A DNA stretch of 64,000 bases from Obrimoposthia wandeli (Eukaryota): contig CDROCS010002890.1 of NCBI GenBank assembly GCA_977020255.1, positions 1 to 64,000 of the forward strand, written 5' to 3'. The position numbers and the translations under genes were made by a program. Every line of letters begins with the position of its first letter. Position 1 is the stretch's first letter. The notes under the pieces are model-generated. The model saw only the letters and a list, made by a program, of their open reading frames with translations. It did not search any database and was not told where the DNA came from. Below are positions 5,349-48,323 of the stretch, one piece after another.

Positions 5349-5511
5349 GTGGCAACCGCAATCAGTATTAATCACTAGCCAAGAGGTTAGTGATGCGATT
5401 TCCTACGCGGATTATATGGGGTGGTATCTTGCGCCGTCACCATTAAATGCTGCTTTTATTACCATGCTAGCAATCAACAAGGTTCTTCATGAAAATCCTA
5501 TCGATAATTAA
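5332..5511 (+). CDS. Small hypothetical protein (59 aa, MNNLSKWQPQ...)
   Basis: Open frame fills the gap between the portal and head genes and overlaps both; below the ORF-track cutoff. Confidence 0.45.
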   Translation: MNNLSKWQPQSVLITSQEVSDAISYADYMGWYLAPSPLNAAFITMLAINKVLHENPIDN

Positions 5512-6550
5512 TGTTAAAGTTGGAAGCCCAGTAATTCCACGGAAAGCAGAAGATCCAGCTCATCAATTTCCGAACCTACGCAATGCTAACGCGCAATTAA
5601 CGAAACGCTATAAAAACATTAAGCGTGGTATTCGAACGTTGATCGCAAGCTTTGAACCTGTACTAATTACAAACAGCGATATTGGTAACTACAAAAATAG
5701 CAACGTAGGCGTTACCTGTATTGATTCTGACAAAGAAGTAACTACAAATGCAGCGGTGTATAAATACCAACTTGATTCACAGCGCTATCAAAGTATTAAC
5801 TTATTCCTGCAGCAATTGCTGTATGGTGAATTACTAGATAACCAGCAAGGAGCATTTACTAATCGTTGGTGGCTCAACGCTAATTTAACGAGTGCTTATA
5901 CTGATGGTACGGCAGATGCATTGCAATCATCTAAAAACATCGCTGTGCCTGCTGTGGTTGGCGTAGAAATATCGCAACAACTTCGAAGCACGCAGTTAGA
6001 ACAAATAGTATTTAGCCCAGGCTTTCAAAATCGTGTCGGGCTGGTCCATGCTCGCGTATTTGAAGGAATGAAAGGATTAAGTGATTCTAGCAAATCAGAC
6101 TTGTCTGCAACGTTAGCGCGATCAATGGCAAAAGGTGCAGGCATTCGTGAAGTTACCAAGGATGTGATGGCCCGTGTTGATGTGTCTCATAATAGAGCTA
6201 AACGAATTGCACGTACTGAGATATTAAATGCTTATCGTGGTGCCTCAGCGACCGAGACTGACGAGATAAATGAAAACGTATACGATGATAGTGAATGGCA
6301 TATGGTGTCGCTGTGGTGGTCAGCACTCAGCCCTACCACTAGGAAAACCCATTCCGCTAGGCACTCGAACACATACACCACCCAAGAAGTTAGGCAATTT
6401 TACAGCGTAAATGGAAACGCGATCTTTTGCTTATGCTCGCAGTCTCCCGTATTAGCAAATAAACGCACTGGTGAAATACTTCAGAAACCACTACAAGATA
6501 GGATGAAGAAACAACGAGAAGCTTGGGAGAAAGCTCACGGTGTAGTATAA
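5489..6550 (+). CDS. Head morphogenesis protein (Mu gpF / SPP1 gp7-like minor capsid)
   Basis: RAKRIARTEILNAY and W.SALSPTTRKTHSARH...N.I.CLCS motifs; position after the portal. Confidence 0.88.
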   Translation: MKILSIINVKVGSPVIPRKAEDPAHQFPNLRNANAQLTKRYKNIKRGIRTLIASFEPVLITNSDIGNYKNSNVGVTCIDSDKEVTTNAAVYKYQLDSQRYQSINLFLQQLLYGELLDNQQGAFTNRWWLNANLTSAYTDGTADALQSSKNIAVPAVVGVEISQQLRSTQLEQIVFSPGFQNRVGLVHARVFEGMKGLSDSSKSDLSATLARSMAKGAGIREVTKDVMARVDVSHNRAKRIARTEILNAYRGASATETDEINENVYDDSEWHMVSLWWSALSPTTRKTHSARHSNTYTTQEVRQFYSVNGNAIFCLCSQSPVLANKRTGEILQKPLQDRMKKQREAWEKAHGVV

Positions 6551-6551
6551 T
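6523..6551 (+). promoter_or_regulatory. Putative sigma70 promoter of RNA-HNH cassette 1
   Basis: TTGGGA (6523) -17 nt- TATAAT (6546), overlapping the 3' end of the head gene. Confidence 0.55.
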
Positions 6552-6556
6552 ATCAA

Positions 6557-6605
6557 TGCGCTGAGGGATTAATTACCCCGTTTCGACTCGTTACCGAACA
6601 GCGCA
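6557..6605 (+). ncRNA. Three-helix structured RNA element E1 upstream of HNH gene
   Basis: P1 TGCGCTG/CAGCGCA; P2 GGG-ATTAATTA-CCC; P3 TTCG-[ACTCGTTAC]-CGAA. The loop is complementary to GTAACGA (6617-6623) and partly to TAACGGAGT, which contains the SD (6629-6637). Confidence 0.75.
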
Positions 6606-6644
6606 AAACTTCCACAGTAACGACGCCTTAACGGAGTGAGTTCT

Positions 6645-7355
6645 ATGATCGTAAATACATGCAAGTCATGCTTATTAACAAAAGATATTTCTGAATTTTA
6701 CAAGTCAACAAGAACAACCTCTGGGTATAGAAATACCTGCAAGCAATGCGCTGCCGAAAACGCAGCAAAAAGATACAGCAAAACAAAGGTTTTCGTAGGT
6801 CACAATCAATCTAACTTGCCACTGCCAGATTTAAACTGGCTTCATGATAATTTTAATTACCACTCTGACGGCTATTTTGTAAGAAAGATCTCAAGAGGAA
6901 GATCTATTGCCGGAACAAAAACCCAAGGTAAGCTTGAAGATAATGGGTATTACAGAGTGAACATTAATTATAGCGCATTCCTTTTGCATATATTAATTTG
7001 GAAGTGGCATTATGGTACTGAGCCAAAATTCATTGATCACAAAGATAAAGACAGGCTGAATTGCAGGATTAACAACTTACGCGAAGCAAGTAAAAACGAA
7101 AATGCTAGAAATCAATTATTACCATCAAATAACACTAGCGGGTTTTACTGTGTAAGGTGGCATGAATATAATGGAAGAGTTGGCAAGTGGGTAGTGTCAA
7201 TTTCCCATGGTGGCAATATTACATCTTCATATTTTTCATGTATAACAACCGCGGTTAACTGGTATTGCATACAAGCGGAGTTGCTACACGGAAAATTCGC
7301 AAAAGATAAGATTGCACACAACAAAAAAGCTTTAGCTGAATATTTATCTAAGTAA
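6645..7355 (+). CDS. HNH homing endonuclease with N-terminal CxxC..CxxC finger
   Basis: CKSC...CKQC at the N-terminus; IDHKDKDRLNCRINNLREAS HNH_3 motif; C-terminal AP2-like region. ATG 6645 follows GGAG (the track starts at GTG 6636). Confidence 0.9.
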   Translation: MIVNTCKSCLLTKDISEFYKSTRTTSGYRNTCKQCAAENAAKRYSKTKVFVGHNQSNLPLPDLNWLHDNFNYHSDGYFVRKISRGRSIAGTKTQGKLEDNGYYRVNINYSAFLLHILIWKWHYGTEPKFIDHKDKDRLNCRINNLREASKNENARNQLLPSNNTSGFYCVRWHEYNGRVGKWVVSISHGGNITSSYFSCITTAVNWYCIQAELLHGKFAKDKIAHNKKALAEYLSK

Positions 7356-7358
7356 AAA

Positions 7359-7389
7359 TAAAGCAACCATTCACAGTGTGGTTGCTTTA
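7359..7389. terminator. Bidirectional intrinsic terminator
   Basis: 11-bp stem TAAAGCAACCA/TGGTTGCTTTA between convergent genes. Confidence 0.75.
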
Positions 7390-7400
7390 ATATATCACCC

Positions 7401-7724
7401 TTACTTGTTTGTTAGTTGTTTAAATAACTTAACTACGCGATCACCATAAACCCGTTGTCTTTCTTCGTCTTTTCTAGGTTGGAGCTTTTTAGTTAGTAAA
7501 TAACCATAATAAATAGAAAATGGCGCACCACCGTTACTACATGAACTCCACATTATTTTATCAACAGAAATCACATGGCAACCATCTTGCAATATATCGC
7601 CAATTTCGAACCTTCTATTTTTTACTGCGTAAGCGTGAAGTAGTTTATTTTTTTGTTTTTCAGCTTCGCTTTCTATGAGTTTAATTTTTGACTTTAACTT
7701 ATCAAGATCTTTATCAATACCCAT
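7401..7724 (-). CDS. Hypothetical phage protein
   Basis: 107-aa ORF with an AGGA-type SD in the leftward early operon. Confidence 0.7.
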   Translation of the reverse strand: MGIDKDLDKLKSKIKLIESEAEKQKNKLLHAYAVKNRRFEIGDILQDGCHVISVDKIMWSSCSNGGAPFSIYYGYLLTKKLQPRKDEERQRVYGDRVVKLFKQLTNK

Positions 7725-7744
7725 CTTATATATCCTTGGTTAAT

Positions 7745-7936
7745 TTAATCACTGATTATCACTACGTTTTCACATCTAACCCAATTCCACTCTCCAGGGT
7801 CATAAGCGTTTTTATCTGGCACAAGTCCAAATAGTGCCTCTTCAAAATCCACTGATATTACGTACTTATTTTCGCCTTGGTACATTACAAACATATTCGC
7901 ACCAAATCTGTGATTGTTAAATTCTTCTAAAGTCAT
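7745..7936 (-). CDS. Hypothetical phage protein
   Basis: 63-aa ORF with AAGGT SD. Confidence 0.65.
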   Translation of the reverse strand: MTLEEFNNHRFGANMFVMYQGENKYVISVDFEEALFGLVPDKNAYDPGEWNWVRCENVVIISD

Positions 7937-8147
7937 TATCTATACCTTACTTGTTGAGTTATTTAATTAATTCGTAAGCATCGTCAAGCGGTTCTTGTGG
8001 AAAGTTTTCCCAACTATCGCACTCTTGAGCCAAGTTAATTAACTTTTCAAGACCGCTCTTTAGCTCCTTTATTCTTAATTCTTAATTCGTGATGATTGAT
8101 AACTATCTGCATTTGTATTTTAGTCACTCCATTACCCTCTTATTTAG

Positions 8148-8432
8148 TTATTTAACCAGCTTATAAAACATTTCCAAGCCGACTTTTCTTTTTGATGCCA
8201 GATTATCATTAAGCAAAATTTTAACGACTCTTGATATTGTGGTGACATTTAAGCCAGTGCCACACACTAATAATTGACGGCTAACCTCGCCATTTTTCTT
8301 GAGGTAATTAGTCACCAAGTCAATTGTCTCTTGCGTTGGTGGCCCTTTACAAGTGCTTTGCGGCTTCTTAACTGGCTTTGCTTTGCCGAAATCGCCATTA
8401 GGATTGAGGCCTTTAAGTGAAGCTAAATTCAT
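8148..8432 (-). CDS. Putative winged-helix DNA-binding protein
   Basis: C-terminal ...NYLKKNGEVSRQLL..GTGLNVTTISRVVKIL... HTH-like pattern; start taken at ATG 8432. Confidence 0.55.
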   Translation of the reverse strand: MNLASLKGLNPNGDFGKAKPVKKPQSTCKGPPTQETIDLVTNYLKKNGEVSRQLLVCGTGLNVTTISRVVKILLNDNLASKRKVGLEMFYKLVK

Positions 8433-8526
8433 GACTATACCCCGAAATAAGTTAATACTGGATCGACTAATACAGCCACTAAGCACAGGGCAAGAATAAT
8501 TAACGCTCTTTGATTGTTGGTCATGG

Positions 8527-9717
8527 CTATTCTCCCTGGAACTTTATTGAATCAATAATCGCCTTTAATCGCTTAATGGCTATAGGTTCCATTTTGTTTC
8601 GATTACCTTTAATGAAATCTTCAAGGTTACTGCTGATCTTGCCTTTGATTTTTTCAACTTTTAGCTTGCCTTTGAATTCATCTTTTATGATATCAAACAA
8701 TACTTTTTTTACTCTTACAGGAACCATGCCCAACAAAACACACCTTTCCATAATTAGCTTGTTTTTGTTGAAATCGCCATTATCATCAACAGGGTAGGCA
8801 TTTTTGCCATTTTTATTTGTGAAAGACTCAAGAGCAATGGTTACGGTTTTTTCGTCATATCCTTTTGAATATGTGCCGCCACCACCGCCAACAACTTCTT
8901 TTACTGAATAGTAATCGCTAACATCTTCAGCACCATCGCTTGATAGTTGAATTAAAATTTCCATGTTCCCGGACTCAGCAAGCAACTTGGTCACTTCTCT
9001 TTGCAGGTAAAAGTCGCTAACTGTGCCTCTGTCGCGGTCAAGCTCTAAAACATTTGGCGCAAAATTATAACTGTAAGTGTACTTATCATTTAAGTCGCAA
9101 ACATATAAACCGCCAACAAATACCTTTTTAGTATCAGTTAACGCTTCTGCACTAAAGCAGTAACTACCATTATTTTGTGCGATTATTTCTATATCATCAT
9201 CCAGTGCATCCATACAAAGATAATTATTTTCTATGATGTCGAAATCTTCATAAGATAAACCAGTGATCATGAATGAAACTTCGTTGGCATCACCATCATC
9301 AATGTAAGTATCTTTAAATACATCAACGGTTAAGCAGTCAGCTCTTAGTTGTGGGTGCATTTCAATACTCACCCGCCAGCAATCAAAGCCATTTTTAACG
9401 AGTACTTTATAACCAAGGCGGCACAGTACTAGTAATGCCAGCTTATAACCTTCGCCATATTTGCCAATAGAGTCAGCATCATCACGCTTACTTGATTCGC
9501 CTAACATTAAGGTTGATAGGTCCATTGCGCCCGCTAAAGACTTTATTTTTAATACTCCGCTGCTTTCCATTTTACTTACGGTGAAGTTTTTTGTATCAAT
9601 AGCGTTTTGCAATATTTCGCGTGTTGCCTCCCAGAAACCCCAATGTTCAACATAGTTTGCGCCGATTGGTAAATATATCTTTTCTTGACTTGCTGCGCTT
9701 TTAATTTGTGTATTCAT
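8527..9717 (-). CDS. GHKL (HATPase_c-like) ATPase domain protein
   Basis: N-box REILQNAID and G2-box IGKYGEGYKLALL, typical of Hsp90/MutL/rIIA/MORC-type ATPases. Confidence 0.75.
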   Translation of the reverse strand: MNTQIKSAASQEKIYLPIGANYVEHWGFWEATREILQNAIDTKNFTVSKMESSGVLKIKSLAGAMDLSTLMLGESSKRDDADSIGKYGEGYKLALLVLCRLGYKVLVKNGFDCWRVSIEMHPQLRADCLTVDVFKDTYIDDGDANEVSFMITGLSYEDFDIIENNYLCMDALDDDIEIIAQNNGSYCFSAEALTDTKKVFVGGLYVCDLNDKYTYSYNFAPNVLELDRDRGTVSDFYLQREVTKLLAESGNMEILIQLSSDGAEDVSDYYSVKEVVGGGGGTYSKGYDEKTVTIALESFTNKNGKNAYPVDDNGDFNKNKLIMERCVLLGMVPVRVKKVLFDIIKDEFKGKLKVEKIKGKISSNLEDFIKGNRNKMEPIAIKRLKAIIDSIKFQGE

Positions 9718-9753
9718 AAAATCTCTCTAAATGTAATTAAGTAACTGGAACTA

Positions 9754-9782
9754 AATATAATCTATAATTAAACGTAATGCAA
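9754..9782 (-). promoter_or_regulatory. Leftward sigma70 promoter with TTACGTTTA box
   Basis: Minus strand TTGCAT-17-TATATT; TAAACGTAA at 9769-9777. Confidence 0.65.
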
Positions 9783-9805
9783 TACAATTTACATTAATAA
9801 ATAAA

Positions 9806-9829
9806 AAAGGCTGCAATTAAGCAACCTTT
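9806..9829 (-). terminator. Putative intrinsic terminator downstream of ssb
   Basis: AAAGGCTGC-AATTAA-GCAACCTTT imperfect stem with a T-run on the minus strand. Confidence 0.55.
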
Positions 9830-9998
9830 ATTATAATCGAAGCGGCTAGATGATTAGTCTATTATGAGGAATGAAAACCTTGCCTAACTCATTTACCGTG
9901 ATCAAGCGTCCATCGCACAAGAGGAGTAGTGCTGTGTATTATGTCGAGTAATACGCGGTACGATTGCGGCTGACGGCATGAGCTGCACCAGTTGTTAG

Positions 9999-10499
9999 TT
10001 AAAAGGGAATATCTAAATCTGGTGCGCTTTGTTGTCCTTGATTAGCAAAACCGCCTTGCTGCTGCCCTTGGTTGCTGGCGTTTATATTCTGCTGAATGGC
10101 TGACTGCTGTGCTGGGGCTTGCTGCTGCTGAAAGCCGCCTTGCTGTGCTGGGGCTTGCTGCCCTTGTGCAATATAACCACTACCTTCAAGTCGTGCGTTA
10201 TCCATGAATAGCTTAATATATGTCTGACCATCTTTTTCGCTTACTTGTGTTTCAATCTTTAGCTTCTCACAATTGACAACAACAAAATTACCGATAACCA
10301 ACGCAGTCGTATAATAATCAACATGGGCAGGACTTCCAGCAAATAATAGTGCTTTATAGTTGGTATACGTTTTCTCACCAGTTTGTCGATCCTTTGTCAT
10401 TTCTGACAACTCAAGAGCAAACATTGTTGAATTGCCATCTTTACCAACACCAGCTTTGATGAATGGTGCTTTTCTTAACTCGCCGTGTACTATATGCAT
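9999..10499 (-). CDS. ssb: Single-stranded DNA-binding protein
   Basis: OB-fold-length N-terminus, Q/G-rich linker, C-terminal DLDIPF tip; located next to the recombinase. Confidence 0.85.
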   Translation of the reverse strand: MHIVHGELRKAPFIKAGVGKDGNSTMFALELSEMTKDRQTGEKTYTNYKALLFAGSPAHVDYYTTALVIGNFVVVNCEKLKIETQVSEKDGQTYIKLFMDNARLEGSGYIAQGQQAPAQQGGFQQQQAPAQQSAIQQNINASNQGQQQGGFANQGQQSAPDLDIPF

Positions 10500-10545
10500 G
10501 ATTATTCCTTTTTGGTACCGTAATTGATTACGGTACCATTATTAG

Positions 10546-11535
10546 TTAAAAGTTATTTTTAATTTGATCATCAGTAACGATTGGTTTTTCAATTACTGGC
10601 TCTGGTGTTTGTTCAACGTGCTTTGCTGGGCTGAATGCTTTTTGCGGTACCACTTCTTCTATTGGATCTTCTTTGTTTAATTCATCAACTGCCTGCGCTG
10701 ATGACCATAAAGGAGATTTTAACGGTAACATTTTCTTTTGCATAGCTTCGGGCATTGATAGCCAAGCTGCTTTTAATGCTTCACAACCATCATTGGAGGC
10801 TAATTGCATTTGATTACGGTAACTGTCCATTTCGGGATCGCAATCGCCAGAATTAACCCAGTCAATAATGGCTTTACCAGTTTCAGCACCAAGATATGTG
10901 GTACCTTCACCAAAAACAGCCTTTAAGTCTTTAGGTATTTTAAGGTGCTGTTGATTCATGCCCTCATTGAACATCATCACACTTGCTGTCATTTCATACA
11001 TGAAGTTCTTTTCACATAAAGGCTGAACACCTAAGCTTACAGGTTTTGATGGCGAGGAAAAATCAGTTTTCTCTGCTGCACGAATACAACAAATTACATG
11101 CATATCGGATTGAAGTAAAACAGTCATCAATTTTTTGTGTTCGGCCTTGGCTTTTTTCCAGTCTGCCATTTTTTTACCGCGCAATAATGGTGCCTCTGCA
11201 ATTTCCATGCAGCCAGACTCCCATTCGTGGCTAATACTGTCAATGATCAACACTTTTACGCCTGCCGCCTGGAACTCTTTTATTGCTGTTGCATAGCGTT
11301 CTGGTGAGAACGGATAAAACAGATCACCAATCTGAAATGGACCGTCTAATTCATCAGCGTATAATGATCCGCGACGATTCTCAGTATCCAAGAAGCCAAT
11401 TTCGCTAGCATTATCAACCATGCCGCGCGCCATATACAAAGCGGTTAATGTTTTCCCGCTTCCAGATTGACCAGCAACCCCGATAACAATTTTTGAACCA
11501 GCTCGAGCTGCTGGGCGAATATTCAATATACTCAT
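10546..11535 (-). CDS. AAA ATPase, Sak4-like single-strand annealing recombinase
   Basis: Walker A GQSGSGKT, Walker B VLIIDSISHEW; exonuclease-ATPase-SSB synteny. Confidence 0.8.
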   Translation of the reverse strand: MSILNIRPAARAGSKIVIGVAGQSGSGKTLTALYMARGMVDNASEIGFLDTENRRGSLYADELDGPFQIGDLFYPFSPERYATAIKEFQAAGVKVLIIDSISHEWESGCMEIAEAPLLRGKKMADWKKAKAEHKKLMTVLLQSDMHVICCIRAAEKTDFSSPSKPVSLGVQPLCEKNFMYEMTASVMMFNEGMNQQHLKIPKDLKAVFGEGTTYLGAETGKAIIDWVNSGDCDPEMDSYRNQMQLASNDGCEALKAAWLSMPEAMQKKMLPLKSPLWSSAQAVDELNKEDPIEEVVPQKAFSPAKHVEQTPEPVIEKPIVTDDQIKNNF

Positions 11536-11611
11536 AAGTACCTCTAATTAAGTTTAGCTAGCATATTACGTTTAAGTTAATAATACTAGCTTTATGTTTG
11601 GTTTTATTTTT

Positions 11612-11824
11612 TTACAAGTCCCATACTGGTTGGTAGTCAGTATTACTAGCCAAATCAATTGGGGTTAAAATCAAACTGCTGCCGTCTTTAAAAATGTATT
11701 TAATATTTGAGCCGTTTAACTCACTGAGCGTATTAGCCTCCTTACCATCAGGCTTAACTCTTAAGCCCTCAATAATGTGGTGCTTTTTGTTTAACGCTAC
11801 AAACGCTCGCATATCTTCCGTCAT
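11612..11824 (-). CDS. Hypothetical protein
   Basis: 70-aa ORF translationally coupled within the operon. Confidence 0.6.
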   Translation of the reverse strand: MTEDMRAFVALNKKHHIIEGLRVKPDGKEANTLSELNGSNIKYIFKDGSSLILTPIDLASNTDYQPVWDL

Positions 11825-11826
11825 AA

Positions 11827-12786
11827 TTAAAACCCATATCGTTTAGCTAGCCATTCAGGCGTTGGCAACTCAACTGCCGAATCGTTATATGCCGGCCAGT
11901 TATCATTATCAACACAGTTTTTATGATATTTAAGCGCAAATTGATATTGTTCACGGCCAATTTGTAATTGCTGATCTGTCATCCAATATAATTGCGGTAT
12001 AAACGGGCTAGACTTGGCTTGTGCTAACAGTCCCATTTTAAATGATTGACTATATGCTGCGGTTAATACGTCACAAACGAACGATTGTTTCAACCAGTAC
12101 CCTGCCTCATGTGCTTGTCTCCCAAACGCATCACCTCGAATATCACGAGTCGTTTTATAATCTGGTACTTCACCATTTTTGGTTACAATATCAGGGCGAA
12201 TTTTTACCTTGTACCATTCGCCATCAATTTCAACTTCGCATACCACTGATAATTCAAACGTGGCACCGTGAAATAATTTAACATTAGCAGGATCGTTAAA
12301 CAATGTTTTGCGCATCAATAATATTTGGTCGTAATCCTCGCCTTTAACCATCGTTTTACCGATTGAATTATATTCCTGGAGTATCACTTCAAGTTGGAAT
12401 ATTTTAACGTTCTCGTCGCACTCAAGCGCTAACTGGACTAATTCATTAAATGGCTTGGTCGTGTAACCCGTTCGACCTGCTGCTTTTAAGTAAGCTTTTA
12501 TTGCCGCATCACTAGTCAAAAATTTGTCGTTATCTTCTTTAGTGATTTTTCGCACAAAAAGACTGTCGAATAATTCAGGTTCTAATACTGCGGCATGGCT
12601 TGCGATACCGAAATGCAACGCGGCACTTTCCTTATTTTCGCCATATTTCAAAACAGCAGGACAATCATTATGAATTACACAAAGCTGTGAGCCGCTAACG
12701 TGATCTTCGAACTTTTCGCCATGGTAATCGTCATTTGGTAGTTCGCCGTTAGGGAATATTTGAATGTTTCGGATTGATGTGATCAT
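11827..12786 (-). CDS. RecE/exonuclease VIII-like PD-(D/E)XK exonuclease (DUF3799-like)
   Basis: Y.G......SGSQL, AL.FG.A.H..VLEPE.F, KIRPD...DYKTT, YW.Q motifs; ATG 12786 overlaps the upstream stop. Confidence 0.85.
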   Translation of the reverse strand: MITSIRNIQIFPNGELPNDDYHGEKFEDHVSGSQLCVIHNDCPAVLKYGENKESAALHFGIASHAAVLEPELFDSLFVRKITKEDNDKFLTSDAAIKAYLKAAGRTGYTTKPFNELVQLALECDENVKIFQLEVILQEYNSIGKTMVKGEDYDQILLMRKTLFNDPANVKLFHGATFELSVVCEVEIDGEWYKVKIRPDIVTKNGEVPDYKTTRDIRGDAFGRQAHEAGYWLKQSFVCDVLTAAYSQSFKMGLLAQAKSSPFIPQLYWMTDQQLQIGREQYQFALKYHKNCVDNDNWPAYNDSAVELPTPEWLAKRYGF

Positions 12787-13298
12787 TATTTTTCCTCCAT
12801 GAATTTCATCATTTCCCACTCAGCGCACTTAATCATATCGGGATCAGTCGCTTCGTAGGGTTCGCTGTCAGTCACAGGTACTTTGATAAAGAAAACTCCC
12901 TTATCAAATTTTCCTACAATCTGAGGCTTACATATTGGCACACCTTGACGTGTCATTTTCCCCAGCACCATACGTCCAGATAAGTCGAAGATAGATAGTG
13001 CGCTGTTGTACATTTTTGGTGGTGCAACCTTGTCGATAAGGTCTTGTATTTTTCGGCCTTCTGTAGTTGAGCGCTTAGGCAGGTAGCCTACTTCGGCTTT
13101 TTTCCATACTTCTTTGGCGGGGCGCTTGTCAAACTTGAAGCCGGCAACGCTGCCACTCTGGTATACTTGACCTTCAGTTGATCCAATTATATCGGCCACT
13201 TCCATGACGTGTTTTTCGTGTGCCACTTTAGCATCGCGCAGCTCGTTCATTTTGGTAGCTAGCTTGCCGCCTGTTACTTTGTAAAATTTGTGGTCCAT
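12786..13298 (-). CDS. Hypothetical phage protein
   Basis: 170-aa ORF with AAGGT SD; first gene after the promoter at 13343-13371. Confidence 0.75.
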   Translation of the reverse strand: MDHKFYKVTGGKLATKMNELRDAKVAHEKHVMEVADIIGSTEGQVYQSGSVAGFKFDKRPAKEVWKKAEVGYLPKRSTTEGRKIQDLIDKVAPPKMYNSALSIFDLSGRMVLGKMTRQGVPICKPQIVGKFDKGVFFIKVPVTDSEPYEATDPDMIKCAEWEMMKFMEEK

Positions 13299-13342
13299 AA
13301 CCTTTACCTTTTATTAATTAACATTATTTAAAAACTAAACAC

Positions 13343-13371
13343 AAGATACATTAAGTAAACTTAATAGTCAA
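13343..13371 (-). promoter_or_regulatory. Leftward promoter with TTAAGTTTA box
   Basis: Minus strand TTGACT-17-TATCTT; TAAACTTAA at 13356-13364. Confidence 0.65.
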
Positions 13372-13810
13372 TAGTGTTATCGAAGTAATCTGAAATACTT
13401 TTTAGTGATGCTTTGAAACCGTAGGCAACAATGCACGTATAACCCAATGATTCAGCCTGCAATAAAAACGCCTTGCTTTCTTTGCTTATCGATGAATCCT
13501 GTTTGCGACTGCGCTTCAGCTCCACATAAAGCCCATGATTGCCATTTGCGGGAACCATGACCAGCCAGTCGGGTACGCCTTTTTTGCGTCCCATCATGTT
13601 TAACATTGCGCCATATTGAGCGCTACCACTGCCGCCGCTCTCATTAATTACGTGAAACATCATGTGCGATAAATCAGGGTATAAAATATTACAGTGCGAA
13701 TTAAGTTGTTTTTGCTCGGGTGCTTCTTTAGGTGACTTAACCTTGCTGGCGTTTAATTGCTCATCCCAATAACATAGGATTCCTGCGCGATTTCTTTTGG
13801 CGATTATCAT
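13361..13810 (-). CDS. VRR-NUC domain nuclease
   Basis: FHVINE...G.KKGVPD.L....G.HGLYVELK...S.EQ-like...L...GY...V.YG motifs. Confidence 0.88.
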   Translation of the reverse strand: MIIAKRNRAGILCYWDEQLNASKVKSPKEAPEQKQLNSHCNILYPDLSHMMFHVINESGGSGSAQYGAMLNMMGRKKGVPDWLVMVPANGNHGLYVELKRSRKQDSSISKESKAFLLQAESLGYTCIVAYGFKASLKSISDYFDNTIDY

Positions 13811-15675
13811 GTGATCACCTCGTCGGCTACCCTTTTATCACCTTTTAAGGTTTTACCATTATTGAATCGTAAGCCATGAACGATACTTCCTTTAGCTCCC
13901 ACTCTATGAGTTATATGGGTTGGAGTAGAAAACATAGCTTTCATTGTGACAACTTGAAATGGCTTCATTGATAGCATCTTCTGTTGGTATGGATACCCCG
14001 TAATATGTCGCCTAACAAAGCTAGATGTCCATGACCTAGCACCACCTTGATTGATTGACCAAAACATAAGCGTGGCGATCTCTTGTTTTCCTGTCTCGTC
14101 AAATACATCGAGAAAATACATAACTTTGATAGCATCTTGGCTTTTGCCTGCGACTTCAACAGTCATTTTTAGCACAGGCTTAAAGTCTTCTGCTGAATAA
14201 TGCTGGCGCTGTAGTGCTGCATTAGGATCAACTAACATATTCCCACACTTACATTCTTTGGCTGCAATATCGCATTTTTCGCCACAACCTTTTGATACCA
14301 ATAAACCGTTACGCAACAAATCTTCACACACTCTAAATTGAAACCAGTGATCACAAGCATCATTACAACAGCGTCTTGCATACTCGCCATTCAATTCATT
14401 ACAAACAGGGCAATCCTGAAAGTTTTTCTCGAATGCGGCCTTTTTCTTCATGGCCTCTTCAAGTACTGGATTTTCATATTGCTGATAAAGTGATGCTACC
14501 GTGCCAGAAAAATCTAATACTAATGAATCGTTTTTTACAATGCCTGCTTCTAACTGCTCTTTTTTTAGTAGTCTACGGCCGCGACCAAGGGTTTGCTCGA
14601 ACAAAACTATTGAACCTATTCGGCGTAGTATAACGATGGTGTCTAATATGGGCGCATTGAAGCCAACTAGGAATATACCTATGTTGATAAGGTATTTAAT
14701 TTTACCTGCTTTAAATGCTGCTACGGCATCTTTACGCTTACTAAATTCAGTGTTAGTAGTTACCCCATCTTTGCTGGTAACGATTGCCCATGTTGAATCT
14801 GATAGTGATTCAGCCACTTCCTTACAGTGCGATGAACCAACACAAACAAGTAAAACACCGTTTCTCTCGCTAGCAATTCTTACCACATCTTCCATGATGT
14901 GATCGGTATCGCTTCGGTTCATTTTATCGTGCATTTTTGATAACTGGTTATCACTGTAATCAGCCGTTGAAAACTCGTTAGTCTCAACTTTTAAATCATC
15001 ACCAAGATCGTAAACGTCACTATTTTCCGTATAACCAAAAGTGTCAGGGTGAGTAAATCCATTACCGACAAGAAATTGACGGTCTATTGCTGGCTCGATC
15101 TGCTTCTTCCAAAAGTCACCGGTTATTGATCGACCATCGCGCCAAGGTGTACCCGACCAACCGATAACAATTAACATAGGATTGATGGCACGAAAGTGAT
15201 TTATTACCTTCATAAAGTCGCTATCAGGATTATCAAACGGAGTATTGTGGCACTCATCAATCTGTAAAACGTGCAACTTATAATCTTTAAACTTATCATT
15301 AAGCGCGTTAGCAACTGAGCCAACTGTCGCAGCAATCACGGGAAAATGTGTTGATTTTCTGCCAACGTACGCGGAAAAATAAGAACATTTAACACCAGCT
15401 TCCCAACAAGTTTCACCGTCCTGCATAGCTAACTCACCAACGGCAGTTAATATCATTGAGTTAATGCCAACGCCCGTGCAATGTTCAGATATTGCCGCCA
15501 TCATTAAGCTTTTACCACTTGATACGCTGGCGTTTATGTAAGCGTGATCAATAGTTCTTTTTTCGCTAAATGATTTAAATTGCTCTCTAATGTGATCTAA
15601 CGTGTTACTAACTACATCGCCTTGAAAATCATACAGAGCGTATTCGCCGTATTTTTTGCCGTGGTATTTATTCAT
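13807..15675 (-). CDS. Superfamily 2 DNA helicase with C-terminal zinc ribbons (T1-like)
   Basis: LYDFQ Q-motif, SVSSGKS Walker A, IDECH Walker B, SGTP motif III, FEQTLGRGRR motif VI, CxxC clusters. Confidence 0.9.
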   Translation of the reverse strand: MNKYHGKKYGEYALYDFQGDVVSNTLDHIREQFKSFSEKRTIDHAYINASVSSGKSLMMAAISEHCTGVGINSMILTAVGELAMQDGETCWEAGVKCSYFSAYVGRKSTHFPVIAATVGSVANALNDKFKDYKLHVLQIDECHNTPFDNPDSDFMKVINHFRAINPMLIVIGWSGTPWRDGRSITGDFWKKQIEPAIDRQFLVGNGFTHPDTFGYTENSDVYDLGDDLKVETNEFSTADYSDNQLSKMHDKMNRSDTDHIMEDVVRIASERNGVLLVCVGSSHCKEVAESLSDSTWAIVTSKDGVTTNTEFSKRKDAVAAFKAGKIKYLINIGIFLVGFNAPILDTIVILRRIGSIVLFEQTLGRGRRLLKKEQLEAGIVKNDSLVLDFSGTVASLYQQYENPVLEEAMKKKAAFEKNFQDCPVCNELNGEYARRCCNDACDHWFQFRVCEDLLRNGLLVSKGCGEKCDIAAKECKCGNMLVDPNAALQRQHYSAEDFKPVLKMTVEVAGKSQDAIKVMYFLDVFDETGKQEIATLMFWSINQGGARSWTSSFVRRHITGYPYQQKMLSMKPFQVVTMKAMFSTPTHITHRVGAKGSIVHGLRFNNGKTLKGDKRVADEVIT

Positions 15676-16046
15676 GATAATTCACCCTTTAATATGTTTG
15701 GGTTTTCATAAATATTACCAACGACAACTAGCTCTTGATGCTTGATAACTCGGCTACTTAATGTGCCGCCACAAAGATAACAACCACTATCAGCGCAGTA
15801 TTCAACCGTGAACGGGTTCCATATAATTGGATCTAATTGATGTAAAACATCACCTTCATAGATATCCTTTCCGTTGATATCTTGCAGGCCGATGAATTGC
15901 ATTAGTACGTCGCCATAATCACCGCGAATTAATTTACAAAGCTCATTTCGCTGGTATTCATCTTTGCATAATTTATCGTTATAAAAGTTAACCATTGTTT
16001 TGTGTGCTTCATGCCATGCTCTAAATTTAATTTCTTTCACAATCAT
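15672..16046 (-). CDS. YopX family protein
   Basis: EIKFRAW...LMQFIGLQDINGKDIYEGD...VVGNIYENP. Confidence 0.9.
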   Translation of the reverse strand: MIVKEIKFRAWHEAHKTMVNFYNDKLCKDEYQRNELCKLIRGDYGDVLMQFIGLQDINGKDIYEGDVLHQLDPIIWNPFTVEYCADSGCYLCGGTLSSRVIKHQELVVVGNIYENPNILKGELS

Positions 16047-17749
16047 TCCCCTAAAATATCTTCAACGCTAACAGTCGCGCCAAATTTTTGATTAAATACT
16101 TCGTATATGTGCAATTTCTCGCACTGTATGAAGTCCTCTGTTTCATTGCAGATTACTTGAAAGCTAATGCCTAACCGTTTTAAATCACTCGTAATAAAGT
16201 TGAAATTATGAGGGTCAAACACGCATACAGTGCAAACACCATGCTCTTTATGTAATCGTAGTGCCTGCCAGTAATCAGTGGTTAACACCGCTTGCCCATT
16301 CAACGCACCAAAAATATAACAGGTGCCGTACATAAATTTCTTATTGAAAAAACGTATGTCGAACCCTTCGCCCTGCAATAATGCCAAGCTCAATAATTCA
16401 CCGTTTAAATTGATGAGCGGTAATACTTGAGAGCTGCCAGCAAAATAATGACCGTTAATTTCTGTGCAACCATTTAATACATCGTTAACCGTTTCTTCTT
16501 TCACCTGGTTAAGCGGTAATCTAATTTTGACCTGCTTGACATAGGTACTCGGCATCGAATCATCAAACGCATTGCTATCGATTATTTTTACTGCATCAAT
16601 GAAGTCGATATTCAAATATTCCTGAATGAATCCGACCACATCACCATGCGCGCCACAACCGAAACAATTCCCCGTTAAGATATGATCATCTAAAGTAAAT
16701 GATTCTGTACCTTTAACCTCACAACAGTAAACGTCATCTGTCACGCCATTATCTTCAACGGAAACAACTGACCATCTTCTTCGTGAAAATTTCTTACTTG
16801 ATTCCTGTATTCTTTTTAGCTGATAACTTCTTACAAATAAAAATTCAGGCATTGTTGAAGAGTCAAAATGAATTCTATGAATATCACTCATGATATTATT
16901 AATACCCATCCTGTTCTGAGTTGTTATTCCATAAGTAAAAATGCCTATCTTGTTACATATGTCTCTAACTTCATTCAACGTTTCTTTTGATGAACAATTT
17001 AAAATAACCGTACCATCTTTAGCCACACAACCATCAGTTGCTATATACCCAGCAATAAATCCTGCCAAGTAATTATTATCCATGCTTAACGCTGGCATAG
17101 TCTTTATATGTGCGCCAATCCCGTAAACTCGTTTAAATCCTTCCTTTTGCGTTATAGACTTGGCGCGAGGAAAGAATACAGACAACGCCTGTTTTTCTCC
17201 GTGTAAGTTTACATGGCTGTATTTTCCTTTGTATACAGTCCCGTCGCCAAAACCTATGCCGTGACAAATCCCACCCTTATCTGCGCTTGAGAATAACTTA
17301 GGCAAACTAGCTGATTCTAACCTACTGCCAATATATAAATTTTCAGTAGTTATTTTTGACTTTCTACCTCTGACAATCCAGTCGTGATCAGGTGTTGCTA
17401 GTATTGTTTTAGTGACTCTGTTCCTACTAAGATTCACGGTTAAAAGTTTTTGCTTGCCAAGAGAAAAGAAAGGAGCATCAACCCACTGCTTATTGTTTGT
17501 TAATATCTTATGACTACCTCCTGCCATATCTGATATTTTCATTACGCCATCGATGGTTATTACTTTAGTGTCGCCATGAAAGCAATGATAAAACTGTTTA
17601 GACTCCGACACAGTAAACGAGGGTGAGTTTTCAGCATGAAACGGGCAGCAAGCACTATATCCGCTACCCTGCTTTTTTAACTCGATATAGCCGCCAATTA
17701 CGTCAACTATATCAACTGAGTTTTTTATGCGATCTATGTCGATTGCCAT
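16043..17749 (-). CDS. CHC2 zinc-finger primase-like protein interrupted by an intein (predicted spliced product 262 aa)
   Basis: CPFHAENSPSF...KQFYH | intein | CFGCGAHGDVV reconstitutes the DnaG-type zinc-binding domain; the C-terminal part resembles a degenerate phage TOPRIM. Confidence 0.9.
   Translation of the reverse strand: MAIDIDRIKNSVDIVDVIGGYIELKKQGSGYSACCPFHAENSPSFTVSESKQFYHCFHGDTKVITIDGVMKISDMAGGSHKILTNNKQWVDAPFFSLGKQKLLTVNLSRNRVTKTILATPDHDWIVRGRKSKITTENLYIGSRLESASLPKLFSSADKGGICHGIGFGDGTVYKGKYSHVNLHGEKQALSVFFPRAKSITQKEGFKRVYGIGAHIKTMPALSMDNNYLAGFIAGYIATDGCVAKDGTVILNCSSKETLNEVRDICNKIGIFTYGITTQNRMGINNIMSDIHRIHFDSSTMPEFLFVRSYQLKRIQESSKKFSRRRWSVVSVEDNGVTDDVYCCEVKGTESFTLDDHILTGNCFGCGAHGDVVGFIQEYLNIDFIDAVKIIDSNAFDDSMPSTYVKQVKIRLPLNQVKEETVNDVLNGCTEINGHYFAGSSQVLPLINLNGELLSLALLQGEGFDIRFFNKKFMYGTCYIFGALNGQAVLTTDYWQALRLHKEHGVCTVCVFDPHNFNFITSDLKRLGISFQVICNETEDFIQCEKLHIYEVFNQKFGATVSVEDILGE
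16667..17584 (-). mobile_element. Intein (306 aa) with LAGLIDADG homing endonuclease
   Basis: Block A CFHGDTKV, block B TPDHDW, LAGLIDADG blocks HGIGFGDG and AGFIAGYIATDG, block F DVYCCEV, block G ILTGN followed by +1 Cys. Confidence 0.93.
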
Positions 17750-17751
17750 GG

Positions 17752-18060
17752 TTATACAATATCTATTTCGTACTTTTCAATAGGAATTATTGCACATTTG
17801 TCTTTGTTGTATTGAAATTGAAGGTTGTTTTTAGCATGATTAGGCCATGTTCCAGATATTTCAACAGAGTGAAAAGGAATGTAAACACCACATTCTGTAG
17901 TTAAATAGCAAATATTAACCCACCATTCTATTTTGTATTTTTTACCTGTTAGTTTAATGATGAATTCAAACTTTCTAATTTCATCAAAAGTAACACCAAC
18001 TAGCAACCCAGCATTAACCCCACTTTCCAATACTTTAATTAACTGCTCTTGTTCCATCAC
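17752..18060 (-). CDS. Hypothetical protein
   Basis: 102-aa ORF with AAGGA SD. Confidence 0.7.
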   Translation of the reverse strand: MMEQEQLIKVLESGVNAGLLVGVTFDEIRKFEFIIKLTGKKYKIEWWVNICYLTTECGVYIPFHSVEISGTWPNHAKNNLQFQYNKDKCAIIPIEKYEIDIV

Positions 18061-18130
18061 ATTTCCTTAATTATTATCAACACCCAAACTATAACACGTT
18101 AAGTTTAGTAATCAAGTGTTATGTTTGTTT

Positions 18131-18316
18131 TTAATTTAAATCCGATTCTTTTAAGTTGAAGTGTTTAGCTATAGCGATTGCATCTTCTTCATCTAAATAT
18201 ACAATCTTGTGATCTGCTAATAGATATATAGTCCTTAGCGTGGTGCGTGAAGGGCATGCAGTAACGTCTAAATCTCTGAAGTCGTATTCTTTTATATTCA
18301 TTGCTTTTATGCTCAT
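18131..18316 (-). CDS. Hypothetical protein
   Basis: 61-aa ORF with AAGGA SD. Confidence 0.6.
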   Translation of the reverse strand: MSIKAMNIKEYDFRDLDVTACPSRTTLRTIYLLADHKIVYLDEEDAIAIAKHFNLKESDLN

Positions 18317-18325
18317 TGCTTTTCC

Positions 18326-19765
18326 TTACTTTAACTTTGGGTTTATGTAAATTACATTGTCAACGATTGCACATAGGTGTAATTCTTCACATGATGGCAA
18401 TATTGACTCTTTCAGGTATGCGGATAACTTAGCTCTACCTTTAAATATTGATCTGTTTTTTATGTTATCGCGTAGGGCTGTTACTTTAACGTTACCTTTG
18501 CCTTTTGATAAAAACTTATTGAACTGTAATATTATTTCATTTAGTTCTGATTTCTGACCGATGTAGCCATGGCTATCTGCAGCAACAATATACATATCCA
18601 TTAAGTTCCTATGGATTTCAATTGCCTTTTTTACTGTGCATAACTGTATTTCAATCGGCTTGTTTTTATGCCAATTTTCAGCAACATGTAACACGCAAGA
18701 AAGTTTTAATACTTGCTTGTCCATCTTGCCAACAGCACCACGTAACATATCATGTGAATATTTACCGCCATCAATCATGTTAGGCTCAATCTCTTCCTTG
18801 CGATCGGTTATTGCTGAAATTGATTCAGGGGTAAATTTAAATTTAGTTTTATCAGAAAATACCAGCTTATTGATCAGGTGTGCATACTTAGCTTTCATTG
18901 CACCTTCAATGGGGTTGAATGTTTTAAATGTGCGTTTGCCTAGCATATTTCCTTCACGGTAAAGTAAAAATCGCTCGCTAGTGCCATTACCTCTTGAGCC
19001 TGCCTCTAATATTGATTTTATAGCCTCGTCTTGTGCTATTACCGCAACAGAACCAGACACAAAACCATCACCAGACTTTCGTGATATTCTGTTAGATGCT
19101 AACCAGTCTCCATCCCATGATTGCAAAATTATATCGTTATTTACCGCGCCGTCATTGTAAAGATTACCAAGGACAACATTGATTGCACCGGCTTCGTCAC
19201 TCACTATATTCCAAGTGTTTGCTTGGCTAAATGCGTAATCCTCAAGCGCTTCTGGCGTGGTATTCGTCACAGCATAGCGATAGACTGGTGTTGCTTCTAA
19301 CTCTTCATGCTTACGCGCTAATTCAGCTATAAGTGTATCTATTTCCATTTCATGCTTAGACGCACCTAACTCGACTTTAATTGCTTTTATTGATGCTTCA
19401 ATTTTAGCTATTTTACTTTGCTGCGTTTTGTTAAAGTCACCAAATGCGATCCGGACAGGGTTTGCCAGCGCTTTGTTTACGCCAGATTTACCCGTTGAAG
19501 GTGGCTGAGCTGTTACAACATATAAACTAACTGGGCATTCTTCATCATAGTAATCATAGCTAAATGACTTAGTCATTGCTGACGCTATAACACCTAATGA
19601 ATGCATATAAACTGTATTACAAGGGAATTGCATTTGTTTACCTATCTGCATGCAAAAATCAGTTAAAAAATCATCCTTTGAAAAATCGATAACATCAACG
19701 TGCTTTACTTGCCCGTCGCTATCCTCTGGCATAATTGGTTCTGGCCATTCGTTTTGTGAAATCAT
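18326..19765 (-). CDS. DUF3987/YfjI-family P-loop replication protein (helicase-like)
   Basis: AQPPSTGKS P-loop, TNTTPEAL, VSDEAG, RF.L, GKMDKQVLKLS.VLH motifs. Confidence 0.8.
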   Translation of the reverse strand: MISQNEWPEPIMPEDSDGQVKHVDVIDFSKDDFLTDFCMQIGKQMQFPCNTVYMHSLGVIASAMTKSFSYDYYDEECPVSLYVVTAQPPSTGKSGVNKALANPVRIAFGDFNKTQQSKIAKIEASIKAIKVELGASKHEMEIDTLIAELARKHEELEATPVYRYAVTNTTPEALEDYAFSQANTWNIVSDEAGAINVVLGNLYNDGAVNNDIILQSWDGDWLASNRISRKSGDGFVSGSVAVIAQDEAIKSILEAGSRGNGTSERFLLYREGNMLGKRTFKTFNPIEGAMKAKYAHLINKLVFSDKTKFKFTPESISAITDRKEEIEPNMIDGGKYSHDMLRGAVGKMDKQVLKLSCVLHVAENWHKNKPIEIQLCTVKKAIEIHRNLMDMYIVAADSHGYIGQKSELNEIILQFNKFLSKGKGNVKVTALRDNIKNRSIFKGRAKLSAYLKESILPSCEELHLCAIVDNVIYINPKLK

Positions 19766-47409: not shown

Positions 47410-47418
47410 TATTCACAC

Positions 47419-47454
47419 AGAAAGCTCGACACTAACCTTCCGAGCTTTCTTTTA
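47419..47454. terminator. Terminator between tailspike and endolysin
   Basis: AGAAAGCTCG/CGAGCTTTCT stem followed by a T-run. Confidence 0.75.
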
Positions 47455-47461
47455 GTTATAA

Positions 47462-48029: not shown

Positions 48030-48058
48030 TTGATTAATGAATAAACATAATATAGTAT
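48030..48058 (+). promoter_or_regulatory. Rightward early promoter with TAAACATAA box
   Basis: TTGATT-17-TAGTAT; box at 48042-48050. Confidence 0.6.
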
Positions 48059-48320: not shown

Positions 48321-48323
48321 GGA

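What the first reader, a model, noticed from the sequence alone, without database searches (positions are those of the whole stretch)
16043..17749. Intein inserted at a zinc-ligand cysteine of the primase CHC2 finger, with Cys1 plus the class-3 W-C-T triplet
The 306-aa intein (17584-16667) sits in KQFYH|CFGC, so its +1 nucleophile is the third Zn ligand and the finger cannot form until splicing occurs. This makes metal- or redox-conditional splicing conceivable (inference). Phage inteins are best known in terminases, helicases, polymerases and RNRs; a zinc-finger site is unusual to my knowledge. The intein has Trp at B12 (TPDHDW), Cys at F4 (DVYC) and Thr at G5 with penultimate Gly (TGN|C). 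This is the signature of class 3 inteins, which normally lack an N-terminal nucleophile, yet Cys1 is retained, so it could be a class 1/class 3 intermediate able to use either pathway.
Basis: partly seen in the sequence, partly recalled or inferred. Interest (0 to 1): 0.75.

Follow-up and report, generated by a model that had tools for sequence, protein, structure and literature searches.

The report
Common primase zinc-finger intein in phage
A marine-type phage's small primase gene is interrupted, just before a zinc-binding cysteine, by a self-splicing mobile intein; the anatomy is real, but this intein family, its residue signature and this insertion site are all widespread, so the case is ordinary.

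Summary
ORF 16043-17749 (-) encodes a 568-aa precursor: a 55-aa N-extein, a 306-aa intein (17584-16667) and a 207-aa C-extein. Intein-free alleles (262 aa, 92% identical) show a clean gap at FYH|CFGCG. The +1 Cys is therefore the third ligand of the DnaG-type CHC2 zinc finger. Cys1, Trp-B12, Cys-F4, Thr-G5, Gly-Asn and Cys+1 are all present in the correct register.

The claim that this is unusual does not hold.
- The intein belongs to a large family (1,712 representative clusters; relatives in 312 bacterial species genomes).
- In that family Cys1, Trp-B12, Cys-F4 and Asn are invariant (132/132).
- The best 80 genome loci all carry the intein at this same site in dnaG (sphingomonads, Azospirillum, Nocardioides, Geodermatophilus).
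- About 64% of representative clusters sit directly before a CxxC zinc knuckle.
- DnaG inteins are already catalogued, and WCT inteins with Cys1, and class 1 inteins with Cys at F4, are already in the literature.

Invariant Cys1 and Cys+1, together with weak profile similarity to class 1 inteins only, favour ordinary class 1 splicing. A dual class 1/class 3 pathway, or zinc or redox gating, remains untested. Verdict: a new member of a known kind, of low interest.

The parts
16043..17749 (-). Precursor gene: intein-containing DnaG-type primase (568 aa plus stop). Its stop overlaps the start of the downstream yopX gene (the ATG at 16044-16046 overlaps the stop at 16043-16045).
17585..17749 (-). 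N-extein, residues 1-55. It carries the first two zinc ligands (CPFH at 17636-17647: Cys35, His38) and ends ...KQFYH.
16667..17584 (-). Intein, 306 aa (precursor residues 56-361): a HINT splicing domain with an inserted LAGLIDADG homing-endonuclease domain.
17582..17584 (-). Cys1 (block A1), the N-terminal nucleophile. It is invariant in 132/132 family representatives and in all 80 genome loci.
17378..17395 (-). Block B, TPDHDW: Thr-B7, His-B10, Trp-B12. Asp at B11 is rare in the family (2/132; Arg in 118).
17240..17260 (-). First LAGLIDADG motif (GIGFGDG), with the conserved acidic residue.
17030..17068 (-). Second LAGLIDADG motif (LAGFIAGYIATDG), with the conserved acidic residue.
16721..16735 (-). 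Start of block F, DVYCC. Cys-F4 lies at 16724-16726 and aligns with Asp-F4 of the Ssp DnaB mini-intein.
16664..16675 (-). End of block G: Thr-G5, Gly-G6, Asn-G7 (16667-16669), then Cys+1 (16664-16666). Cys+1 is the third zinc ligand of the mature protein.
16046..16666 (-). C-extein, 207 aa: CFGCG (zinc ligands 3 and 4), the rest of the zinc-binding domain, then a domain of about 150 aa with no sequence-family match but a predicted DnaG/T7 gp4-like primase fold.

Best explanation
This is an ordinary, probably still mobile, LAGLIDADG-containing intein of a very large family. The family's preferred home is the codon of the first Cys of a CxxC zinc knuckle, above all the third zinc ligand of DnaG-type primase zinc-binding domains.

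Here it interrupts the compact primase (262 aa when mature) of a phage of about 46.8 kb related to Pseudoalteromonas-type phages. The gene lies in a replication module with a DUF3987 helicase, YopX and an SF2 helicase.

The precursor cannot form the CHC2 zinc site until the intein is removed. This follows from the geometry: ligands 1-2 and 3-4 are 306 residues apart in the chain.

Splicing most likely follows the standard class 1 route (inferred):
1. Cys1 makes the N-S acyl shift.
2. Cys+1 takes over the N-extein.
3. Asn306 cyclises.
4. An S-N shift restores the FYH-CFGCG peptide bond.

Cys at F4 occupies the place of the usual Asp. Together with Trp-B12, Thr-G5 and Gly-G6 it is a fixed trait of the family, and its precise role is unknown. 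Among sampled members of this primase clade the intein is found only in this phage, and both endonuclease motifs are intact. This fits gain by homing.
For: Anatomy and empty alleles.

Family size and signature:
- 1,712 representative clusters at E<=1e-3 and 449 at E<=1e-30.
- C1, T-B7, H-B10, W-B12, C-F4 and N-G7 are invariant in 132/132. T-G5 is present in 120, G-G6 in 116 and C+1 in 128.

Same site elsewhere:
- 79 of 80 GTDB loci show the full CHC2 context, and the 80th is truncated upstream.
- P0025 and P0035 pass the TIGR01391 dnaG equivalog cut-off with the model split at position 56/57.
- The profile flanks match solved DnaG primases on both sides of the intein.
- 84 of 131 clusters lie before a CxxC.

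Class 1 leaning:
- Cys1 and Cys+1 are invariant or nearly so.
- The only sub-significant PDB profile matches of the splicing blocks are class 1 inteins: DnaE N-intein, PhoVMA, and Ssp DnaB with VEEVF-D aligned to VEEVF-C.
- No solved class 3 intein appears at E<=10.
- The literature recognises class 1 inteins with Cys at F4 outside the class 3 clade.

Fold: pLDDT 96.8, with best matches TliVMA, PI-PfuI and PI-SceI.

Endonuclease: both motifs and both acidic residues are conserved.

Sporadic distribution: 18 or more clade members at 43-90% identity are intein-free, and no other intein-bearing allele of this clade is in 5.8 billion proteins.

Host protein is a primase: PHROG 'DNA primase' hits, 1d0q at E=5.5e-36, and fold matches to Aquifex DnaG, T7 gp4, T4 gp61 and Twinkle.
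Against: - No splicing or cleavage data exist for this protein.
- Cys-F4, Trp-B12 and Thr-G5 are as invariant as Cys1. Cys-F4 therefore clearly matters, and a catalytic role as nucleophile or relay is not excluded.
- The profile matches to class 1 inteins are not statistically significant (E 0.01-0.7).
- I could not obtain class 3 sequences to build a joint tree.
- I could not read Tori & Perler 2011, which as I recall tested WCT inteins that have an N-terminal nucleophile.
- The window's intein deviates from its family at B11 (Asp; 2/132). It lacks both the block-F His (Glu here; 17/132) and the penultimate His, so its rate of C-terminal cleavage is uncertain.
Confidence: 0.72

Rival explanations
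1. Hybrid or dual-pathway intein. [quoted passage not shown] On this view the family represents the state from which class 3 inteins arose when position 1 was lost.
For: - The W-C-T residues are in the correct register and are invariant or nearly so across the family.
- Tori et al. 2010 found the triplet to covary strongly with class 3, and left open how WCT inteins with Ser1 or Cys1 splice.
Against: - Cys1 is invariant in 132/132 clusters and 80/80 genome loci. That is not expected if it were dispensable.
- No family member without a position-1 nucleophile was seen.
- Class 1 inteins with Cys-F4 were reported outside the class 3 clade.
- No solved class 3 intein is detected by the family profiles.
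Confidence: 0.15
2. Conditional switch. Splicing is gated by zinc or redox state, and so couples primase maturation to the state of the cell. The active centre holds three thiols (Cys1, Cys-F4, Cys+1), and the exteins contribute four zinc ligands.
For: - The +1 Cys is a zinc ligand, and ligands 1-2 lie 18-21 residues upstream of the N-terminal junction.
- In the class 3 Msm DnaBi1 intein, the F4 Cys binds zinc and forms a reversible disulfide, and both block splicing (PMC7360933).
- 64% of family clusters sit at CxxC knuckles.
Against: - Zinc inhibition in vitro is common among Cys-dependent inteins, so it would not show an adaptive role.
- The same family also sits in ribonucleotide reductases and other non-zinc sites (47/131 clusters).
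- The preference for CxxC is explained more simply by the need for a +1 Cys and by the conserved DNA of such motifs serving as a homing target.
- The closest relatives of the phage do without the intein.
Confidence: 0.1
3. Decaying or inactive intein. The element no longer splices, and the interrupted gene is non-functional or tolerated.
For: - There are rare substitutions at B11 (Asp), and no His at either the block-F His position or G6.
- The nearest sampled intein is only 54% identical.
Against: - The 568-codon frame is open.
- Every family-invariant residue (22 columns) is retained, including both endonuclease aspartates.
- Glu at the block-F His position occurs in 17/132 members, and Gly at G6 is the family norm.
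- The exteins are 92% identical to an intact empty allele.
Confidence: 0.03

Closest known systems
Bacterial DnaG inteins of Actinobacteria and Proteobacteria, listed by Novikova et al. 2016 (PMC4760082). Examples seen here: Geodermatophilus obscurus DSM 43161 (L070), Novosphingobium indicum (L005), Azospirillum and Nocardioides species.
   Same: - The same insertion point (…[FY][HY] | CFGCG) in the CHC2 zinc finger.
- The same family, at 38-49% identity over all 306 residues.
- The same signature: C1, T/H/W in block B, C-F4, T-G-N, C+1.
- The same LAGLIDADG endonuclease domain.
   Different: - The host here is a 262-aa phage primase, not a cellular DnaG of about 630 aa.
- The window's intein has Asp at B11, Cys at F5, Glu at the block-F His position and His at G2.
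Class 3 inteins (mycobacteriophage Bethlehem DnaB, Msm/Mch DnaB-1, Dra Snf2)
   Same: Trp-B12, Cys-F4 and Thr-G5 are present, and the setting is phage-associated.
   Different: - Cys1 is retained and invariant.
- Cys+1 replaces Ser/Thr+1, and the penultimate residue is Gly.
- The site is a zinc knuckle, not a P-loop.
- There is no detectable profile similarity to solved class 3 inteins.
- Class 1 inteins with Cys-F4 are reported outside the class 3 clade.
Vibrio phage ICP1 NrdA intein (annotated in HQ641347.1) and the Thermobifida phage P318 ribonucleotide reductase intein
   Same: They are the only relatives in cultured-phage records, at 25-30% identity over the full length. They share Cys1, Cys-F4, L-T-G before the last residue, Cys+1 and a LAGLIDADG domain.
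   Different: - The host protein is a ribonucleotide reductase.
- The C-terminal residue is Gln, not Asn.
- ICP1 has Phe at B12.
Ssp DnaB mini-intein and DnaE inteins (class 1, solved)
   Same: These are the best, though weak, profile matches of blocks A/B and F/G. Block F is nearly superimposable except for Asp to Cys at F4.
   Different: E-values are 0.05-0.7, which is not significant. They have no endonuclease domain, and they have Asp-F4 and His-G6.
PI-SceI, PI-PfuI, TliVMA and PhoVMA inteins (solved bifunctional inteins)
   Same: The overall two-domain fold, HINT plus LAGLIDADG (Foldseek E down to 3e-14, TM 0.6-0.7).
   Different: They are 9-16% identical, larger, and have an extra DNA-recognition region.

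Membership tests
Intein (HINT splicing domain) | An in-frame insertion that is absent from orthologues, with exact extein continuity | tested here: met
   A clean 306-aa gap against nine intein-free homologues. P0001 is 92% identical and 262 = 55 + 207 aa.
Intein (HINT splicing domain) | Blocks A, B, F and G with a position-1 nucleophile, TxxH, a C-terminal Asn and a +1 Cys/Ser/Thr | tested here: met
   Cys1, Thr64/His67, Asn306 and Cys+1 are present. The register was confirmed against DnaE and DnaB inteins.
Intein (HINT splicing domain) | HINT fold | tested here: met
   The AlphaFold2 model has pLDDT 96.8, and Foldseek gives TliVMA, PI-PfuI and PI-SceI at E 3e-14 to 1e-9.
Intein (HINT splicing domain) | Protein splicing activity | not testable with these tools
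   Inferred only, from the intact catalytic residues and the conserved exteins.
Class 3 inteins | No N-terminal Cys/Ser/Thr nucleophile, or one that is dispensable | tested here: not met
   Cys1 is present and invariant in 132/132 clusters and 80/80 genome loci. Whether it is dispensable cannot be tested here.
Class 3 inteins | The W-C-T triplet (B12, F4, G5) | tested here: met
   Trp69, Cys287 and Thr304 are in the verified register.
Class 3 inteins | Membership of the monophyletic class 3 clade | tested here: inconclusive
   No solved class 3 intein is matched by the family profiles at E<=10, and the weak matches are class 1 inteins. No joint tree could be built.
Class 3 inteins | A block-F branched thioester intermediate | not testable with these tools
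   This is a biochemical property.
Class 1 inteins | Cys1/Ser1/Thr1, a +1 nucleophile, a C-terminal Asn, and Thr-B7 and His-B10 | tested here: met
   All are present and family-invariant. The common but non-defining Asp-F4 and His-G6 are replaced by Cys and Gly.
DnaG-type CHC2 zinc-binding domain (PF01807) | C-x2-H-x17-C-x2-C and the domain profile | tested here: met
   PF01807 at E=2.5e-33 in two stretches. TIGR01391 matches positions 7-74. The empty-allele profile matches 1d0q at E=5.5e-36.
DnaG/T7 gp4-type primase (TOPRIM RNA-polymerase domain) | A catalytic TOPRIM domain with acidic metal-binding residues | tested here: inconclusive
   There is no Pfam, NCBIfam or PDB sequence hit beyond residue 119 or so. 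The predicted fold of the empty allele matches Aquifex DnaG, T7 gp4, T4 gp61 and Twinkle, but at pLDDT 78 and low TM scores. Catalytic residues were not assigned.
LAGLIDADG homing endonuclease (two-motif) | Two LAGLIDADG helices, each with an acidic residue | tested here: met
   GIGFGDG (109-115) and LAGFIAGYIATDG (173-185). Asp114 is invariant and Asp184 nearly invariant in the family. PF14528 at E=3.8e-8, and I-DmoI fold matches.
LAGLIDADG homing endonuclease (two-motif) | Site-specific DNA cleavage | not testable with these tools
   None.

The most novel reading that the evidence does not exclude
The family to which this intein belongs has Cys1, W-C-T, Gly-Asn and Cys+1, at least 1,700 clusters, and sits mostly at zinc knuckles. 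It could be the living form of the class 1 progenitor from which class 3 inteins arose. It might splice through a three-thiol relay in which Cys-F4 is catalytic, with maturation of zinc-finger hosts gated by zinc or redox state.
Probability: 0.1. Interest if true: 0.65.

Novelty: new member of a known kind. Interest (0 to 1): 0.25.

Why it matters
The single locus matters little. It adds one phage primase to a long list of DnaG-type primases that carry the same intein at the same zinc-ligand codon.

The family-level picture may interest intein specialists.
- A very large natural group combines an invariant Cys1 with the full class 3 W-C-T triplet. Recent structural papers call that triplet class-3-specific (PMC7664689).
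- Most of the group's members sit directly before a CxxC zinc knuckle.

[quoted passage not shown] They also offer many natural sequences for testing what Cys-F4 does in a class 1 setting.

Tried and rejected
Searches that found nothing or little:
- Megablast of the locus against 50,697 phage records: no match.
- Exact look-up of the 568-aa protein: not on record.
- Single-sequence phmmer of the intein against the PDB: no hit at E<=1.
- Intein-bearing alleles of the same primase clade in the 312-994 aa range: none.
- IMG/VR scan with the intein: one remote relative only (L083, 27% identity).

Literature I could not reach:
- Tori & Perler 2011 is not held, by DOI or by PMC id.
- The supplement of Tori et al. 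2010 naming the three WCT inteins with Ser1/Cys1 is not held.
- Text searches for 'TOPRIM intein', 'JS614' and 'Tfu2914' found nothing.

I recall that Tori & Perler 2011 tested a Nocardioides JS614 'TOPRIM' intein, which may belong to this family. I could not check this, so it remains unverified.

Ideas considered and dropped:
- That the second copy of the region (46.8-64 kb) might be an intein-free allele. It contains the intein and is simply indel-rich.
- That the host protein is only a zinc-finger protein and not a primase. The fold search points to a DnaG/T7 gp4-like domain, but the question stays open.
- That the deviations at B11 and at the block-F His position mark decay. They fall within family variation.
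The pieces were searched apart, and natural empty alleles were used instead.
Full report
**What is there.** The minus-strand ORF 16043-17749 encodes 568 residues. This is a 306-aa segment beginning CFHGDT and ending HILTGN, flanked by ...KQFYH and CFGCG.... Pfam reports the DnaG CHC2 zinc ribbon (PF01807, E=2.5e-33) in two separated stretches, a LAGLIDADG_3 domain (E=3.8e-8) and a weak intein-splicing match. NCBIfam gives dnaG positions 7-74 and a weak intein N-terminal match.

**Empty alleles.** I searched with the C-extein alone, so that shorter proteins could be seen. This found 22 homologues of 114-273 aa, all carrying PF01807.
- Nine of them, aligned with the precursor, show one clean 306-residue gap between the invariant FYH and CFGCG.
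- The closest, P0001, is 262 aa (55 + 207) and 92% identical.
- Its DNA (L001) is 162/165 identical over the N-extein and 552/624 over the C-extein.
- A search for longer, intein-bearing alleles of the same clade found none.
- The intein is therefore sporadic within this phage group, as expected for a homing element.

**The site.** The profile of the empty alleles matches the solved zinc-binding domain of Bacillus stearothermophilus DnaG (1d0q) at E=5.5e-36, with CPFH and hCFGCG aligned. The +1 Cys is thus the first Cys of the CxxC knuckle, the third ligand of C-x2-H-x17-C-x2-C. The identity of the ligands in 1d0q is from my own knowledge of that structure. It follows directly that the finger cannot form before splicing.

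**The signature residues.** I checked the register with tools rather than from memory.
- A profile of the first 100 intein residues (window plus 25 relatives) aligns block A and block B with DnaE N-inteins. This places Thr64 at B7, His67 at B10 and Trp69 at B12.
- A profile of the last 50 residues aligns with the Ssp DnaB mini-intein, VEEVF-D against VEEVF-C. This places Cys287 at F4.
- Thr304, Gly305, Asn306 and Cys+1 follow.

**How common it is.** An exhaustive HMMER search of 1.84 billion representative proteins with the intein gave 1,712 hits at E<=1e-3 and 449 at E<=1e-30. I analysed the 131 best hits that cover the whole intein.
- With the query included (132 sequences), Cys1, Thr-B7, His-B10, Trp-B12, Cys-F4 and Asn-G7 are invariant. 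Thr-G5 is present in 120, Gly-G6 in 116 and Cys+1 in 128.
- By flanking sequence, 40 are plainly CHC2 primase fingers, 8 are C4-type, and 36 more lie directly before a CxxC. That makes 84 of 131 at a zinc knuckle.
- The rest include ribonucleotide reductases and other proteins.

A scan of one genome per bacterial species found relatives in 312 genomes. The best 80 all have the intein at this same point of dnaG, in 79 cases with the full CPFH...PSF...[FY][HY] | C[FH]xC context. They come from cultured Novosphingobium, Sphingopyxis, Sphingomonas, Sphingobium, Azospirillum, Nocardioides, Nocardiopsis, Geodermatophilus, Blastococcus, Modestobacter and others.

Two representatives pass the TIGR01391 dnaG equivalog cut-off, with the model split at position 56/57. 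A profile of 51 family proteins matches solved DnaG, T7 gp4 and T4 gp61 primases on both sides of the intein.

Novikova et al. 2016 list DnaG, with 14 inteins in Actinobacteria and Proteobacteria, among the top intein hosts. Surveys of actinobacteriophages also list primase inteins.

**Class 1 or class 3.** The literature bears on this as follows.
- Tori et al. 2010 defined class 3 by the W-C-T triplet plus the lack of an N-terminal nucleophile. They noted that 3 of 37 WCT inteins begin with Ser or Cys, and that all but one class 3 intein have Ser/Thr at +1.
- A later paper from the same laboratory states that class 3 inteins are monophyletic. [quoted passage not shown] In the present family Cys1 never varies across sequences that are otherwise only 26-54% identical. 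This argues that Cys1 is required. Cys+1 is nearly fixed.

The only PDB matches of the splicing blocks are class 1 inteins, and they are weak (E 0.01-0.7). No solved class 3 intein appears at E<=10.

I therefore favour the standard four-step class 1 route, at about 0.7. Cys-F4 is equally invariant, so a catalytic or relay role for it is not excluded. I could not read Tori & Perler 2011, which as I recall examined such inteins.

**Zinc and redox.** In the class 3 Msm DnaB-1 intein, the F4 Cys binds zinc and forms a disulfide, and both block splicing. A centre with three thiols next to a half zinc finger could plausibly be sensitive too. That would be a general property of Cys inteins, and the nearest phages manage without the intein. 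I rate an adaptive switch at about 0.1.

**Integrity and mobility.**
- The AlphaFold2 model of the intein, built on a 51-sequence alignment, has pLDDT 96.8. It matches bifunctional inteins (TliVMA, PI-PfuI, PI-SceI) and I-DmoI.
- Both LAGLIDADG motifs, and the two conserved acidic residues (Asp114 invariant, Asp184 nearly invariant in the family), are present.
- The intein has lower GC3 (0.30) than the exteins (0.42), but that is within the range of neighbouring genes.
- Its nearest sampled relative, P0023 at 54%, sits at the same site of another small CHC2 protein, next to DUF3987 and SNF2 helicase genes.
- The window's intein is a divergent member. Asp at B11 occurs in 2/132, Glu at the block-F His position in 17/132, and His at G2 in 9/132.

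**Host protein and context.**
- Neighbouring genes are a DUF3987 helicase (PHROG 'DNA helicase', E=1.6e-135), YopX, an SF2 helicase, a PDDEXK nuclease and an AAA_24 protein.
- The closest cultured phages with a similar primase are Pseudoalteromonas phages XCL1123 and TW1, at 34-35% identity.
- The C-terminal 150 residues or so have no sequence-family match. The predicted structure of the natural empty allele (pLDDT 78) matches Aquifex DnaG, T7 gp4, T4 gp61 and Twinkle.
- 'Primase' is therefore reasonable, but its catalytic residues were not verified.

**The window itself.** Positions 46792-64000 repeat positions 1-18879 at 81-87% identity, with about one gap per ten bases and almost no long ORFs. 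This includes a noisy copy of the intein gene: 77% identity, 140 gap openings, longest stop-free stretch 61 aa. It looks like the unpolished overlap of a long-read concatemer of a genome of about 46.8 kb.

**Note on method.** None was used as tool input or as evidence, and the registers cited rest.

**Verdict.** This is a new member of a known kind, of low interest as a single locus. The family-level signature carries modest residual interest.

Noticed in passing
window 46792-64000 versus 1-18879: The end of the window is a second copy of its beginning (unit about 46.8 kb). It is only 81-87% identical, with roughly one indel per ten bases and almost no ORFs over 70 aa. It includes a noisy copy of the intein-primase gene (outer bounds about 61695-62933; 140 gap openings). 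It is most likely an unpolished long-read concatemer or circular overlap, not a biological duplication.
   Followed up: partly
window 16046-16500 (-), C-terminal domain of the primase: The last 150 residues or so have no Pfam, NCBIfam, PHROG or PDB sequence match. The predicted fold of the empty allele P0001 nevertheless resembles DnaG/T7 gp4/Twinkle primase domains. This may be a very divergent, minimal TOPRIM domain. Its catalytic acidic residues were not identified.
   Followed up: partly
family level (P0023-P0172; L002-L081): 64% of representative clusters of this intein family sit immediately before a CxxC zinc knuckle, with +1 as the first Cys. The hosts are CHC2 primases, C4 ribbons, and a recurrent 'AHDSGDG...H | CPFCGSG' protein of unknown identity. 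The family seems to specialise in zinc-ligand cysteines.
   Followed up: partly
L084 (Vibrio phage ICP1 nrdA) and L085 (Thermobifida phage P318 RNR): The only relatives in cultured-phage records are ribonucleotide-reductase inteins ending in L-T-G-Gln rather than Asn. They still have Cys1 and Cys-F4, and ICP1 has Phe at B12.
   Followed up: partly
window 16664-16669 versus L001 junction: Around the insertion point the occupied and empty alleles differ by a synonymous change 13 bases upstream of the junction (AAA/AAG) and in the first two C-extein codons (TGT TTC versus TGC TTT). Changes like these could affect recognition by the homing endonuclease.
   Followed up: no
window 17378-17395 and L083:3001-3300: The rare Asp at block B position 11 (ATPDHDWI) is shared with a remote intein (27% identical) on an IMG/VR viral contig. 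Nearly all other family members have Arg there.
   Followed up: no
window 35058-35298 and 42378-42618: An inverted repeat with 241-nt arms, 71% complementary, lies 7 kb apart within the structural-gene region.
   Followed up: no
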